DNA of 64,000 nucleotides. Origin: Octopus sinensis (lineage: Eukaryota). The stretch's first letter is position 1. Each line of letters starts with the position of its first letter. The position numbers and the translations under genes are program-made. This document shows, one piece after another, positions 3,988 through 53,127 of the stretch. The notes beneath the pieces were generated by a model that was not told where the DNA came from, searched no databases, and worked only from the letters and a program-made list of their open reading frames with translations. The stretch is taken from contig NC_043000.1 in NCBI RefSeq assembly GCF_006345805.1, forward strand, positions 128,154,001 through 128,218,000, in the 5' to 3' direction.

Positions 3988-4212
3988 TTAATAATTTTTA
4001 CCTAACTTATCTATGTGTCCGAACCAAACAAATCTATCTGCACGGATGTGTATTGGCTGCAACTGTCCCTTGTCTGGAGTTAAAGACACAACGAAACCTC
4101 GCCAGTCTAAAGTAATCTGGGGTGCTGGGGTACACATTTTGTTGTTTATGTATGGTGGAAGATCCAGCTGAGTTATATCGCTCACATAGCTACCAAACAG
4201 TGCTTTGTATTT
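3988..4212 (-). CDS. Gene A exon 12 (terminal): KYKALFGSY...LDLPPY...LDWRGF...[19 protein letters not shown]
   Basis: Poly-T + CAG acceptor, phase 0; homologous to gene B exon 12. Confidence 0.9.
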   Translation of the reverse strand, partial: KYKALFGSYVSDITQLDLPPYINNKMCTPAPQITLDWRGFVVSLTPDKGQLQPIHIRADRFVWFGHIDKLGKNY

Positions 4213-52800: not shown

Positions 52801-53127
52801 CACGAACTCAAGAATATATGTATCGAAGGGTGTGTTTATATATGTGATGTCATGTGGTTACATCAAAAACACTTGCCTCATCGCTTCAACGTTCGCCTTT
52901 AAATCCCTCTTTTCGCATGACTTCTGTTTGTTCAATTCTAAGTCGTCAACTTGAATGAGATTACGAAATTCAGCAGCGTTGGTAGTTTGCGGTGACAGCT
53001 TCAGGTAATAACCCAACAACACACCAGATCCTACACACAACACTGTCAGTACAACAATGACAATCACTAAAGTTGGCACACTGATGTAAAACTGATTCTT
53101 TTTCTCTTCGTTTTCTCCAGAAGCCAT
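28674..53127 (-). CDS. Gene B: 12-exon paralog of gene A, CBM9-like/DOMON-like type II membrane protein, 434 aa
   Basis: Spliced CDS 1305 nt using one exon-8 copy; exons 2-10 same lengths and phases as gene A; same motif series. Confidence 0.85.
28985..29216 (+). mobile_element. SINE family A, well-preserved copy in gene B intron 11
   Basis: Head gagctggcagaaacgttagc..gagttcaaattcc (A/B boxes), core gcatcctttcggggtcgattaaataagtaccag. Confidence 0.85.
31426..31534 (-). CDS. Gene B exon 11: (R)WGLLQFRTVPVNSTIFQPDPYLPLQKTLSEIYEAEH
   Basis: ttttaaaag acceptor, GTAAAT donor, 109 nt. Confidence 0.9.
31836..32049. mobile_element. Fold-back (hairpin) MITE-like element
   Basis: Nested inverted arms: atgttttgtt/aacaaaacat, tattagccttgagag/ctctcaaggctaata, cgcttggtgcataaa/tttatgcaccaagcg, gaatcgtctgtca/tgacagacgattc. 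Confidence 0.7.
33340..33428. repeat. (GA)n microsatellite
   Basis: Directly visible. Confidence 0.95.
33434..33504 (-). CDS. Gene B exon 10: KFNGDTDWWVWNSPEVSNIHLPN(R)
   Basis: aatttcag acceptor, GTAATC donor, 71 nt. Confidence 0.92.
34332..34374 (-). CDS. Gene B exon 9: (R)SNWEVEVVGNKYEK
   Basis: Weak tcttctgatgaaag acceptor, GTGAGA donor, 43 nt. Confidence 0.85.
34860..35297 (-). mobile_element. SINE family B, near full length, with internal CA/CATA microsatellite
   Basis: Head aggcgtaggagtggctgtgtggtaag..gggttcagtcc; tail ccagcatggccacagtcaaatgactgaa. Confidence 0.85.
35441..35552 (-). CDS. Gene B exon 8, duplicate copy 2
   Basis: Same sequence as 35965-36076, shifted 524 bp. Confidence 0.6.
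35965..36076 (-). CDS. Gene B exon 8, copy 1: (N)KFWQVEMALPFKQLTAG...DIWQANFV(R)
   Basis: GTAAGA donor; the acceptor aaaaaaaAG|AC gives 112 nt and the same phase as gene A exon 8. Confidence 0.8.
36289..36385 (-). CDS. Gene B exon 7: PYLNDGEPLFLWESNLLRAVYIDGPVNNPKIP
   Basis: ctttctgtattttcag acceptor, GTGAGT donor, 97 nt. Confidence 0.92.
36405..37165 (-). mobile_element. Internally deleted DNA-transposon remnant (superfamily not assigned)
   Basis: CINNPEDFCHIY..KAYYPYY and KINEVVVFVSQGICKLLD..AFKMDTNNFPGNKRAEN..LLQTY resemble, from memory, a widespread invertebrate transposase-like family (C.N.PD.FCY..; FLGN.KA.NY). Confidence 0.55.
37180..37440. repeat. ~260-bp loopless imperfect palindrome centred at 37313/37314
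   Basis: Centre ccttttcaatagtcatgactattgaaaagg; arms pair out to tctgttgtg / cacaacaga. Confidence 0.9.
37602..37888. mobile_element. MITE with ~50-bp imperfect TIRs
   Basis: gtgcaactttggcgcgtggtctacaa..attactttaggttactttt versus aaaagtaacttaaagtaat..ttgtagatcacacgctaaagttgcac. Confidence 0.6.
38479..38897 (-). mobile_element. SINE family A, dimeric copy
   Basis: One tRNA head followed by two tandem core and tail units. Confidence 0.88.
39377..39434 (-). CDS. Gene B exon 6: (K)YKEIVINALGTVSDSMISK
   Basis: ttttatttatag acceptor, GTTCGT donor, 58 nt. Confidence 0.88.
40533..40564 (-). CDS. Gene B exon 5 (32-nt microexon): LLLDTERSNH(K)
   Basis: ttttttgacag acceptor, GTAAGA donor. Confidence 0.85.
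42010..42403 (+). mobile_element. Helentron/DINE-1-like non-autonomous element
   Basis: Starts actagcagtatcgcccggcgttgcgcggg, ends cagctttatatatagagagat in a T-rich site; matches HINE-type architecture as I recall it. Confidence 0.55.
42960..43123 (-). mobile_element. SINE family A degenerate copy
   Basis: gaacgtaaagacggtcgaaatgccgctaagc...ctgtcagctcgtcgcc head. Confidence 0.65.
43195..43217 (-). CDS. Gene B exon 4 (23-nt microexon): (V)YQDNAFQ
   Basis: cttatatttttag acceptor, GTAAGT donor. Confidence 0.88.
43260..43656 (-). mobile_element. SINE family A, dimeric copy just upstream of the 23-nt microexon acceptor
   Basis: Same dimer layout as 38479-38897. Confidence 0.88.
44130..44578 (-). 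mobile_element. Two tandem degenerate SINE family A copies
   Basis: Two cores and heads at ~44130-44350 and ~44360-44578. Confidence 0.75.
44915..45062. repeat. Degenerate (GAT)n
   Basis: Directly visible. Confidence 0.9.
45303..45440 (-). CDS. Gene B exon 3: (D)IRGEDFPLPRFETQVKLRWDDTYLYVAARLQDTDVWANKTLHDTT
   Basis: attcag acceptor, GTAAAT donor, 138 nt. Confidence 0.92.
45557..46066 (+). mobile_element. Internally deleted mariner element (510 bp)
   Basis: TA flanks; TIRs ttgggttgtccggaaagttcgtgccgattt / aaatcggcacgaactttcctgacaacccaa; LLQLGWDVLPHPPYSPD..FHLFRSLQ. Confidence 0.9.
46072..46424 (+). mobile_element. SINE family B degenerate copy
   Basis: ggcacaggcatggctgtgtggttaag head through ccccagcatggccgcagtc. 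Confidence 0.75.
49025..49188 (-). CDS. Gene B exon 2: (S)FLNRCKDESCKAVTCDLSIPRNYIVY...VDGSLEETAWTEVHWTKPFV
   Basis: ctttgtttag acceptor, GTATGT donor, 164 nt. Confidence 0.92.
49532..49832 (+). mobile_element. GC-rich tRNA-derived SINE (distinct family)
   Basis: ggaggcgcaatggcccagtggttagggcag A-box, ggtttcgattccc B-box, aataaa tail. Confidence 0.7.
51222..51403 (-). mobile_element. SINE family A copy with internal deletion
   Basis: Core aggatgaaaggcaaagtcggcctcagcggaatttgaactcagaa and head ctgccagctcgccgcc. Confidence 0.75.
51870..52805. repeat. TATC/TGTC, TCCA and CA microsatellite blocks
   Basis: Directly visible. Confidence 0.9.
52877..53127 (-). CDS. Gene B first coding exon: MASGENEEKK + transmembrane helix + stem, ending EAM(S)
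   Basis: Hydrophobic run VPTLVIVIVVLTVLCVGSGVLLGYYL; AG|GCAAGT donor, phase 2; aligns to gene A exon 1 (D.L.L.K...C......E..SFL). An acceptor tttcag precedes 53133. Confidence 0.85.

What the first reader, a model, noticed from the sequence alone, without database searches (positions are those of the whole stretch)
3988..53127. Hidden tandem pair of membrane-anchored, bacterial-like CBM9/DOMON-domain genes
Seen: two complete 12-exon genes (420 and 434 aa) with matching intron positions and phases, largely invisible in the ORF track. Knowledge (from recall): the motif series IDG.LDE.AW, T.K.WDD.LY.A.L, DN.FE.F.D, N..TVWD, W.VE..PF, W.NF.R, W.W.P..HLP.RWG is typical of CBM9-like proteins best known from bacteria; I know of no characterised animal member. 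Inference: an uncharacterised cell-surface or Golgi glycan-binding or glycan-processing system, of ancient or horizontally acquired origin and since duplicated and intronised.
Basis: partly seen in the sequence, partly recalled or inferred. Interest (0 to 1): 0.75.

Follow-up and report, generated by a model that had tools for sequence, protein, structure and literature searches.

The report
Octopus tandem pair of CBM9-like genes
Two neighbouring octopus genes, each split into 12 small exons, encode membrane-anchored proteins with a sugar-binding-type (CBM9-like) fold; both are real, already annotated as "uncharacterized", inherited vertically in molluscs and an annelid for over half a billion years, and still have no known function.

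Summary
The minus strand carries two head-to-tail genes of 12 coding exons each. Gene A (25929→3988) encodes 420 aa and gene B (53127→28674) encodes 434 aa. All 11 intron phases match and nine exon lengths are identical. Both products are exact matches to Octopus sinensis RefSeq proteins named "uncharacterized protein" (LOC118763118 and LOC115210583), so they are hidden only from an ORF track.

Both pass Pfam CBM9_1. AlphaFold models match solved CBM9 modules best (Foldseek E 1e-9 to 1e-12, TM about 0.7-0.77) and heme-type DOMON subunits more weakly. Each protein has one N-terminal hydrophobic anchor, no catalytic domain, and a C-terminal helix plus small sheet.

The family is very large in bacteria and patchy in eukaryotes: many molluscs, the annelid Owenia, Euglenozoa and a picoeukaryote-like contig. 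The 12-exon structure recurs almost exon for exon in Lottia and a chiton, and Owenia shares most intron positions. The A/B split predates the molluscan classes (bootstrap 92-100%), and B-then-A adjacency recurs in Lottia.

Recent horizontal transfer is therefore refuted. A very old transfer and ancient eukaryotic ancestry both stay open. The most likely function is non-catalytic binding of glycan chain ends at the cell surface or in the secretory lumen; this is inferred, not shown.

The parts
3988..25929 (-). Gene A (O. sinensis LOC118763118): ATG to stop, 12 coding exons, 420 aa, A-type paralogue
   Evidence: Unique GT-AG chain. Exact match to XP_036358372.1.
25754..25929 (-). A exon 1 (176 nt): short cytosolic tail, transmembrane anchor (about residues 7-29), stalk
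   Evidence: Hydropathy maximum 2.27.
23594..23757 (-). A exon 2 (164 nt, phase 2): Cys-rich CAAETCD stretch and start of the CBM9-like domain ([10 protein letters not shown]). An alternative acceptor 8 nt downstream gives isoform X2.
21448..21585 (-). A exon 3 (138 nt, phase 1): [17 protein letters not shown]
20468..20490 (-). A exon 4 (23 nt, phase 1): VFNDNAFE, with the family-wide conserved Glu167
18911..18942 (-). A exon 5 (32 nt, phase 0)
16913..16970 (-). A exon 6 (58 nt, phase 2): [14 protein letters not shown]
15110..15206 (-). A exon 7 (97 nt, phase 0)
13582..13693 (-). A exon 8 (112 nt, phase 1): WSVEMSLPF ... WYANFAR
12103..12145 (-). A exon 9 (43 nt, phase 2)
7279..7349 (-). A exon 10 (71 nt, phase 0): [16 protein letters not shown]
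5145..5268 (-). A exon 11 (124 nt, phase 2): end of the CBM9-like domain (RWGLIQF) and start of the long C-terminal helix
3988..4212 (-). A exon 12 (225 nt including the stop, phase 0): C-terminal small beta subdomain with a conserved Cys
28674..53127 (-). Gene B (O. sinensis LOC115210583): ATG to stop, 12 coding exons, 434 aa, B-type paralogue
52877..53127 (-). B exon 1 (251 nt): cytosolic tail, transmembrane anchor (about residues 14-41), stalk. GC donor AG|GCAAGT.
   Evidence: Hydropathy maximum 3.03. AF2 helix at residues 17-43.
49025..49188 (-). B exon 2 (164 nt, phase 2)
45303..45440 (-). B exon 3 (138 nt, phase 1)
43195..43217 (-). B exon 4 (23 nt, phase 1): VYQDNAFQ, with the B-type Glu-to-Gln change
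40533..40564 (-). B exon 5 (32 nt, phase 0)
39377..39434 (-). B exon 6 (58 nt, phase 2)
36289..36385 (-). B exon 7 (97 nt, phase 0)
35965..36076 (-). B exon 8, copy 1 (112 nt, phase 1)
35441..35552 (-). B exon 8, copy 2: identical second copy inside an exact 524/525-bp tandem duplication (35096-35620 and 35621-36144). Only one copy can be spliced in without a frameshift.
34332..34374 (-). B exon 9 (43 nt, phase 2)
33434..33504 (-). B exon 10 (71 nt, phase 0)
31426..31534 (-). B exon 11 (109 nt, phase 2)
28674..28880 (-). B exon 12 (207 nt including the stop, phase 0)

Best explanation
The window is Octopus sinensis chromosomal DNA. It carries an ancient tandem pair (B upstream of A, same strand) of paralogous genes.

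Each gene encodes a single-pass protein in this order: a short N-terminal tail, one hydrophobic signal-anchor helix, a Cys-containing stalk, a roughly 235-residue CBM9-like (DOMON-superfamily) beta-sandwich, and a roughly 110-residue C-terminal long helix plus small beta-sheet. The topology is probably type II.

Shown here: the gene models, the domain family, the predicted fold, vertical inheritance within Lophotrochozoa, the age of the duplication, and purifying selection on both copies.

Inferred: the ectodomain faces the extracellular space or the secretory lumen. It acts as a non-catalytic, lectin-like binder of glycan chain ends, as canonical CBM9 modules do through an aromatic clamp. B has a shifted specificity or a regulatory or partner role, because every molluscan B-type has Gln where the rest of the family keeps an almost invariant Glu. 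The physiological ligand and process are unknown.
For: Gene models:
- The models are exact matches to RefSeq proteins.

Domain and fold:
- Pfam CBM9_1 is above its gathering score for A, B, the chiton protein and a bacterial relative.
- phmmer and hmmsearch hit the CBM9 modules of xylanases 7nwn and 1i82.
- The AF2 models have pLDDT 77 and 81. Foldseek top hits are 4jpq, 7nwo/7nwn and 1i82, E 1e-9 to 4e-12, TM normalised to the target 0.70-0.77.
- Each protein has one hydrophobic segment, conserved sequons, and an even number of ectodomain Cys in A.
- The position of clamp residue Trp71 (TmCBM9-2) / Tyr89 (CkCBM9.3) is aromatic here: Phe in A, Tyr in B (alignments; clamp residues from PMC8280721).

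Family size and bacterial context:
- 3906 clusters at 50% identity match at E<1e-3.
- Bacterial members are fused to M61 peptidase, transglutaminase, GH38 or S9 hydrolase domains.
- Some bacterial members are translationally coupled or fused to GHL10-like glycosidase-type proteins. This is the behaviour of an accessory binding module.

Vertical descent:
- Lottia 164341 exons are 227,164,138,23,32,58,97,112,43,71,109,219 nt. Chiton B-type exons are 257,164,138,23,32,58,97,112,43,71,109,213 nt.
- Owenia exons are 138,55(=23+32),58,100,226(=112+43+71),112,213 nt.
- Lottia has three such genes in tandem on one strand, B-like before A-like.
- Neighbour-joining bootstrap: mollusc clade 100%, B-type 92%, A-type 62%.

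Selection and expression of the B lineage:
- A spliced transcript in SRR25158143 is 67% identical to B across exons 3-12.
- dN is 0.25 with dS saturated.
Against: - No binding or localisation data exist for any member of this subfamily.
- Only the N-terminal half aligns by sequence to characterised CBM9. The second clamp tryptophan and the three calcium sites could not be mapped, because model coordinates cannot be superposed with these tools.
- Conservation of polar residues is unusually high for a mere binding module: E167, E181, E236, R267 and H301 are 97-100% conserved across the family.
- The proteins are stand-alone, whereas classical CBM9 modules are appended to xylanases.
- The Owenia and protist homologues have cleavable-looking signal peptides rather than anchors, so membrane anchoring is not a family property.
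- Expression in the octopus itself was not tested here.
Confidence: 0.6

Rival explanations
1. The domain is a heme-binding, DOMON-type electron-transfer module, like the gamma subunits of ethylbenzene dehydrogenase or nitrite oxidoreductase or the cytochrome domain of cellobiose dehydrogenase. It would then not be a sugar binder.
For: Foldseek matches both models to NxrC 7b04_C (E 1.5e-5 and 9e-4), to EbdC 2ivf_C (E 2e-4 and 5e-5), and weakly to the DOMON of dopamine beta-hydroxylase 4zel. His301 and Lys130 are nearly invariant in the family.
Against: CBM9 structures match 5-7 orders of magnitude better, and only CBM9 families are hit by sequence. No conserved Met was seen among the columns that are at least 80% conserved. 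No redox partner domain is present: there is a single transmembrane helix and no cytochrome b561 or reductase domain.
Confidence: 0.07
2. The conserved roughly 340-residue unit (beta-sandwich plus C-terminal subdomain) is itself an enzyme acting on glycans, for example a lyase or hydrolase built on a beta-sandwich. The octopus pair would then be a membrane-bound glycan-processing system.
For: Acidic, basic and aromatic residues (E167, E181, E236, R267, H301, Y179) are near-invariant from bacteria to molluscs. Many bacterial members are stand-alone proteins of 340-400 aa that include the C-terminal part. All B-types carry the same Glu-to-Gln change, which resembles a catalytic and pseudo-catalytic pair.
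Against: Sequence and fold show no similarity to any known catalytic family. In multidomain bacterial proteins the module accompanies unrelated catalytic domains, which is how binding modules behave. The conserved acidic residues may simply be the calcium and ligand sites known in CBM9 (PMC8280721).
Confidence: 0.12
3. The genes are a recent bacterial acquisition by cephalopods, or bacterial contamination of the assembly.
For: The great majority of family members are bacterial. No deuterostome or ecdysozoan was among the hits whose names I could retrieve.
Against: Each gene has eleven spliceosomal introns, with repeats and a mariner remnant inside them. The exon structure is near-identical in Lottia and a chiton and largely shared with an annelid. 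Adjacency is conserved in Lottia. The mollusc clade is monophyletic at 100% bootstrap.
Confidence: 0.01
4. Gene B is a decaying duplicate (pseudogene) and only A is functional.
For: B has lost the family-wide Glu (DNAFQ) and the Trp of TVWD. Its Pfam score is much lower, 27.9 bits. An exact internal duplication of exon 8 would frameshift the transcript if both copies were spliced in.
Against: The 434-aa ORF is intact, with all splice sites usable. B-type orthologues with the same Gln are present in chiton, Haliotis, Lottia, Patella, Nucella and Babylonia. A spliced B-type transcript exists in another cephalopod, with dN 0.25 and dS saturated. The AF2 ectodomain pLDDT is mostly above 90.
Confidence: 0.03

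Closest known systems
CBM9 modules of GH10 xylanases: Thermotoga maritima Xyn10A CBM9-2 (PDB 1i82) and Caldicellulosiruptor kristjanssonii CBM9.3 (PDB 7nwn/7nwo)
   Same: Same Pfam family, PF06452. Same beta-sandwich fold (Foldseek E 1e-9 to 1e-12, TM 0.71-0.77). The IDG..D..W, WDD..LY and D..E.F.D motifs are conserved, and the first clamp position is aromatic.
   Different: The octopus proteins are stand-alone rather than appended to a glycoside hydrolase. They are anchored by an N-terminal transmembrane helix and carry an extra roughly 110-residue C-terminal helix and sheet. They share under 20% identity with these modules, and only the N-terminal half is alignable by sequence. The second clamp Trp and the calcium sites are unverified. 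The host is an animal.
BACUNI_03838 (PDB 4jpq), a putative carbohydrate-binding protein of Bacteroides uniformis (CBM9_2-type, structural genomics)
   Same: It is the best or second-best structural match for both models (E 4e-12 and 3e-10, TM 0.70-0.74). It is also a stand-alone protein of unknown function.
   Different: It is bacterial and shorter (about 220 aa), lacks the C-terminal subdomain, and is 12-16% identical.
Uncharacterised bacterial 'carbohydrate-binding family 9-like' proteins of 340-400 aa, for example P0007 from a planctomycete-like MAG
   Same: Same full-length architecture including much of the C-terminal region. They are 34-39% identical and carry the same invariant residues.
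   Different: They have a bacterial signal peptide or lipoprotein-type N-terminus, and they lack the eukaryote-type Cys pair. Some branches are coupled or fused to GHL10-like, peptidase or transglutaminase domains.
Heme-type DOMON domains (EbdC 2ivf_C, NxrC 7b04_C) and animal DOMON proteins (dopamine beta-hydroxylase 4zel; insect Knickkopf, from my own knowledge)
   Same: They belong to the same beta-sandwich superfamily. Animal DOMON proteins are likewise extracellular or luminal.
   Different: The structural match is much weaker, there is no Pfam DOMON hit, and neither heme ligands nor a redox partner are evident.

Membership tests
CBM9 (Pfam PF06452 CBM9_1 / CAZy CBM9) | Sequence match to the family HMM above the curated gathering score | tested here: met
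   A scores 46.0 bits and B 27.9 bits against a cutoff of 23.4. Only model positions 1-118 (A) and 1-82 (B) of 185 are matched.
CBM9 (Pfam PF06452 CBM9_1 / CAZy CBM9) | Beta-sandwich fold of the solved CBM9 modules | tested here: met
   On predicted models only: Foldseek 1i82_A E 2e-11 (TMt 0.77) and 7nwo E 1e-11 for A; 7nwn E 2e-10 and 1i82_A E 4e-9 (TMt 0.75) for B.
CBM9 (Pfam PF06452 CBM9_1 / CAZy CBM9) | Aromatic clamp that sandwiches the terminal sugar (Trp71 + Trp175 in TmCBM9-2; Tyr89 + Trp191 in CkCBM9.3) | tested here: inconclusive
   The first position aligns to Phe (A, VFNDNAFE) or Tyr (B, VYQDNAFQ) in the HMMER alignments. The second lies in the part that does not align by sequence, and model coordinates cannot be superposed with these tools. 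The clamp definition comes from PMC8280721.
CBM9 (Pfam PF06452 CBM9_1 / CAZy CBM9) | Three structural calcium sites | not tested
   Conserved Asp, Glu and Asn columns exist but were not mapped onto the sites.
CBM9 (Pfam PF06452 CBM9_1 / CAZy CBM9) | Binding of reducing ends of beta-1,4-glucans and xylans (type C CBM) | not testable with these tools
   Needs recombinant protein with ITC, DSF or glycan arrays.
CBM9 (Pfam PF06452 CBM9_1 / CAZy CBM9) | Module appended to a carbohydrate-active catalytic domain (the CAZy sense of a CBM) | tested here: not met
   No other Pfam or NCBIfam domain is found in A or B. The proteins are stand-alone.
DOMON (Pfam PF03351; heme or sugar-binding DOMON superfamily) | Match to the DOMON HMM, or a heme-ligand pair (Met/Lys or Met/His) | tested here: not met
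   There is no DOMON hit even at E<=1. Only fold-level matches to EbdC, NxrC and DBH were found, at E 1e-5 to 1e-2. No conserved Met column was seen. The relationship holds at superfamily level only.
Single-pass type II (signal-anchor) membrane protein | One N-terminal hydrophobic helix of about 20-25 residues preceded by basic residues, with no other transmembrane segment | tested here: met
   Kyte-Doolittle 19-residue maxima are 2.27 (A, residues about 7-29) and 3.03 (B, about 14-41), and no window elsewhere exceeds 1.6. AF2 models a helix at residues 17-43 in B. Topology and localisation are not testable here.
Tandem gene duplicates | Adjacent, same orientation, homologous products, shared intron positions and phases | tested here: met
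   B-then-A adjacency also occurs in Lottia.

The most novel reading that the evidence does not exclude
A and B form a lophotrochozoan-specific two-subunit surface receptor or organiser for the ends of beta-linked polysaccharide chains, such as chitin of shell, radula, beak or chaetae, or dietary or microbial glycans. A would be the ligand-competent subunit. B would be an obligate partner carrying a Glu-to-Gln change, kept beside A for more than 500 million years. Alternatively, the whole uncharacterised family (thousands of bacterial members) is a new class of glycan-acting enzyme whose first animal representatives these are.
Probability: 0.12. Interest if true: 0.7.

Novelty: new variant of a known kind. 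Interest (0 to 1): 0.4.

Why it matters
CBM9 is regarded as a microbial module attached to xylanases. Here it appears as a stand-alone, membrane-anchored protein pair. Molluscs, and at least one annelid, have kept it with almost frozen exon structure since before the molluscan classes diverged.

This gives a clean, testable entry point into an unstudied animal glycan-recognition family. It also opens up a very large uncharacterised bacterial family with the same architecture.

It is a useful example for debates on horizontal transfer. A 'bacterial-looking' animal gene turns out to be anciently resident, with a patchy eukaryotic distribution that includes Euglenozoa and picoeukaryotes.

It is not a new gene discovery: both loci are already in RefSeq.

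Tried and rejected
The spacings were approximate and several motifs span exon junctions. The looser cores are all present.
- My first gene B model used a GT donor and gave 436 aa. I replaced it with the GC-donor model that matches RefSeq and the orthologues.
- NCBIfam gave no family.
- The Biopython bootstrap timed out. I replaced it with my own NJ with Kimura distances.
- Deep branching among eukaryotic and bacterial sequences is unsupported (18%). I therefore make no claim on a single versus multiple origin.
- dN/dS could not be computed as a ratio because dS is saturated.
- Literature searches for the locus names, for CBM9 in molluscs and for the SRA run returned nothing relevant.
- I looked for a third paralogue in the window by tblastn and found none.
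- The bacterial context of P0007 was uninformative.
- In the chiton, the gene just upstream of the A-type gene is another A-like copy, not the B-type, which lies about 31 Mb away. A/B adjacency is therefore not universal in molluscs.
- The weak Foldseek hit of the C-terminal part to a minor pilin (4noa, E 0.13) and the weak Pilin_GH Pfam hit in P0007 are too weak to use.
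Full report
**What is in the window**

The window is AT-rich (about 37% G+C), microsatellite-laden animal DNA. Six-frame translation and a tblastx comparison of its two halves showed a colinear series of short conserved coding pieces on the minus strand.

For gene A, a search over splice sites found one and only one GT-AG chain that reproduces a complete protein. It has 12 coding exons from 25929 down to 3988 and encodes 420 aa. That sequence is exactly XP_036358372.1, 'uncharacterized protein LOC118763118 isoform X1' of Octopus sinensis.

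For gene B, I found exons of the same length and phase as A for exons 2-10, and set exons 1, 11 and 12 by hand. My first model (436 aa) used a GT donor in exon 1. The RefSeq protein LOC115210583 (P0189, 434 aa) uses the textbook GC donor AG|GCAAGT 6 nt upstream. Its junction residue matches A and the orthologues, so I adopt it.

All 11 intron phases agree and nine exon lengths are identical. The proteins are 41% identical (E = 4e-112). B ends 2.7 kb upstream of A's start codon, on the same strand. No third copy lies in the window.

One of seven matches literally in A and none in B. All seven cores are present in order in both proteins.

**What the proteins are**

- Both exceed the Pfam gathering score for CBM9_1, A with 46 bits and B with 27.9 against a cutoff of 23.4. 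No other domain is found.
- By sequence they hit only the CBM9 modules of two thermophile xylanases in the PDB.
- AlphaFold models (A isoform: pLDDT 77, pTM 0.79. B: pLDDT 81, ectodomain mostly above 90) are matched best by CBM9 structures 1i82 and 7nwn/7nwo and by the uncharacterised Bacteroides protein 4jpq. Foldseek E-values are 1e-9 to 4e-12 and TM scores normalised to the target are 0.70-0.77.
- Heme-type DOMON-like subunits (EbdC, NxrC) and the DOMON of dopamine beta-hydroxylase match much more weakly. 'CBM9-like' is therefore well supported, and 'DOMON' holds only at superfamily level.
- Each protein has a single strongly hydrophobic N-terminal segment preceded by basic residues, two N-glycosylation sequons, and ectodomain cysteines. 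These include a CxxxxC stretch just before the domain and one Cys in the C-terminal part, which eukaryotic but not bacterial relatives share. This fits a signal-anchored protein with a luminal or extracellular ectodomain, though topology is an inference.
- After the beta-sandwich comes a long helix and a small sheet (about 110 residues) with no convincing structural relative.

**The family**

HMMER against 1.84 billion representative proteins found 3906 clusters at E<1e-3 and 319 at E<1e-30. Most are bacterial. One close relative sits in a planctomycete-like MAG.

In multidomain bacterial members the module accompanies M61 peptidase, transglutaminase-like, GH38, S9 hydrolase or kinase-WD40 domains. 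In a Gemmatimonadetes MAG and another bacterium its stop codon overlaps the start of a GHL10-like (glycosidase-type TIM barrel) gene, and a Bacteroidales protein fuses the two. The GHL10 scores lie just below Pfam's cutoff but are consistent in three proteins. This is how an accessory binding module behaves, and it links the family to carbohydrates.

Against a purely passive role, an unusually large set of polar residues is 97-100% conserved from bacteria to molluscs: E167, E181, E236, R267 and H301 in A numbering. I therefore keep an enzymatic reading as a minority rival.

**Origin and history**

Named eukaryotic hits are:
- Cephalopods: Octopus, Argonauta, Acanthosepion.
- A chiton: Liolophura.
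- Gastropods: Lottia, Patella, Haliotis, Nucella, Babylonia, Elysia.
- Bivalves: Mizuhopecten, Mactra, Tegillarca, Potamilus.
- The annelid Owenia.
- The euglenozoans Diplonema and Heteronema.
- A gene on a compact eukaryotic metagenome contig, next to cullin and ATG8 genes.

I mapped exons of the exact proteins onto their genomes.
- Lottia 164341 has exons of 227,164,138,23,32,58,97,112,43,71,109,219 nt.
- The chiton B-type has 257,164,138,23,32,58,97,112,43,71,109,213 nt.
- Two other Lottia genes differ only by fusion of the 23- and 32-nt exons.
- Owenia has 138, 55 (=23+32), 58, 100, 226 (=112+43+71), 112 and 213 nt in the same phases.
- The Diplonema gene is intronless.

Lottia carries three such genes in tandem on one strand, B-like before A-like, as in the octopus. 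In Patella caerulea the B-type and A-type locus tags are two apart. In the chiton the B-type lies about 31 Mb from an A-type tandem pair on the same chromosome.

A neighbour-joining tree (263 columns, 300 bootstraps) gives 100% for a mollusc clade, 92% for a B-type clade containing octopus B and the chiton and gastropod B-types, and 62% for the A-type clade. The genes were therefore already intron-rich before molluscs and annelids split, and the A/B duplication predates the divergence of the molluscan classes. Recent transfer or contamination is excluded.

Whether the lophotrochozoan gene descends from an ancient eukaryotic gene with many losses, or from a very old transfer, cannot be decided. 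The eukaryotic sequences cluster together in the tree, but with only 18% support. I also could not retrieve names for most hits.

**Is gene B alive?**

The ORF and all splice sites of B are intact. A Logan contig from run SRR25158143 is a spliced transcript colinear with B exons 3-12. It is 67% identical in protein and 68% in DNA, and it shares B-specific residues such as TVSD. dN is 0.25 with synonymous sites saturated.

All molluscan B-types carry Gln where 99% of other family members, and nearly all A-types, have Glu (the DNAFE motif). This residue aligns with the Glu of the VEIF motif in TmCBM9-2. That is a fixed, lineage-wide change, not decay. It suggests an altered ligand or a partner role.

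**Mechanism I commit to**

I think a signal-anchored, non-catalytic, glycan chain-end-binding ectodomain is the most likely reading. Canonical CBM9 binds reducing ends between two aromatic side chains (PMC8280721). The first clamp position is aromatic in A (Phe) and B (Tyr). I could not locate the second.

Confidence is high for gene structure, family and evolutionary history. It is moderate to low for the function.

**Novelty**

The loci are already annotated: RefSeq calls them 'uncharacterized protein', and UniProt or INSDC name the relatives 'Carbohydrate-binding domain-containing protein' or 'carbohydrate-binding family 9'. I found no paper on any animal member.

They are best described as a new variant of a known kind: stand-alone, membrane-anchored, anciently duplicated CBM9-like proteins of lophotrochozoans. 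Interest is moderate.

Noticed in passing
window 35096-35620 and 35621-36144: An exact (100%) tandem duplication of 524/525 bp inside gene B duplicates exon 8 (35965-36076 and 35441-35552). The exon is 112 nt, so splicing in both copies would shift the frame. It is either a very recent duplication or an assembly artefact.
   Followed up: partly
window 23749-23757 and 25754-25799: RefSeq isoform X2 of gene A (P0001, 374 aa) arises from an alternative acceptor 8 nt downstream in exon 2 (TTTAAG|CTTTTTAG|). This frameshifts the main ORF, so the model starts at an internal out-of-frame ATG (25799) and lacks the membrane anchor. It is probably a non-productive isoform.
   Followed up: yes
window 8217-9217, minus strand (intron 9 of gene A): Remnant of a mariner-type DNA transposon. 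The ORF at 8217-8708 hits Pfam Transposase_1 (E 1.2e-21) and DDE_3. A possible second, unverified mariner-like HTH fragment lies at 59684-59995.
   Followed up: partly
window 53651-54037 and 19537-19806, minus strand: Open frames that resemble the C-terminal tails of non-LTR retrotransposon ORF2 proteins, judging from my own knowledge. Pfam gave no hit.
   Followed up: partly
window 24509-24721, 35084-35296, 35621-35821, 54803-55117, about 59099-59251: A dispersed SINE-like repeat of roughly 200 bp (translating as ...[18 protein letters not shown]...) followed by (TG/CA)n-type microsatellites. Copies sit in introns of both genes and in the flanks.
   Followed up: no
window 52877 (donor of gene B exon 1): Gene B intron 1 uses a GC-AG intron with the consensus AG|GCAAGT. 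A cryptic GT lies 6 nt downstream and would add two residues.
   Followed up: yes
window 43195-43217 (gene B exon 4); orthologues P0190-P0195, P0026: Every molluscan B-type protein has Gln at the position where 99% of the non-molluscan family members and nearly all A-types (one has Asp) have Glu (A: DNAFE; B: DNAFQ). It is a fixed signature of the paralogue.
   Followed up: partly
L010 6001-7997, L014 6001-8129, P0207: In two bacterial lineages the CBM9-like gene overlaps by 4 nt the start of a GHL10-like (PF02638, just below cutoff) gene, and a Bacteroidales MAG protein fuses both. This is a possible conserved functional pair in bacteria.
   Followed up: partly
L006 (Lottia scaffold KB202481.1) 1403-21630; L015 (Liolophura) 1-24970: Lottia has three tandem family members on one strand: 164341, 164342 and 233878. 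The chiton has a tandem pair of A-like genes, and its B-type lies about 31 Mb away on the same chromosome.
   Followed up: yes
Transmembrane segments of A (residues about 20-29) and B (about 32-41): The membrane helix carries a motif, G-x-G-[VI]-x-[IV]-G-[YH]-[FLY], conserved across most of the anchored mollusc members examined (octopus, cuttlefish, chiton, limpets, bivalves). It contains a GxxxG-type pattern, which may indicate helix-helix association.
   Followed up: no
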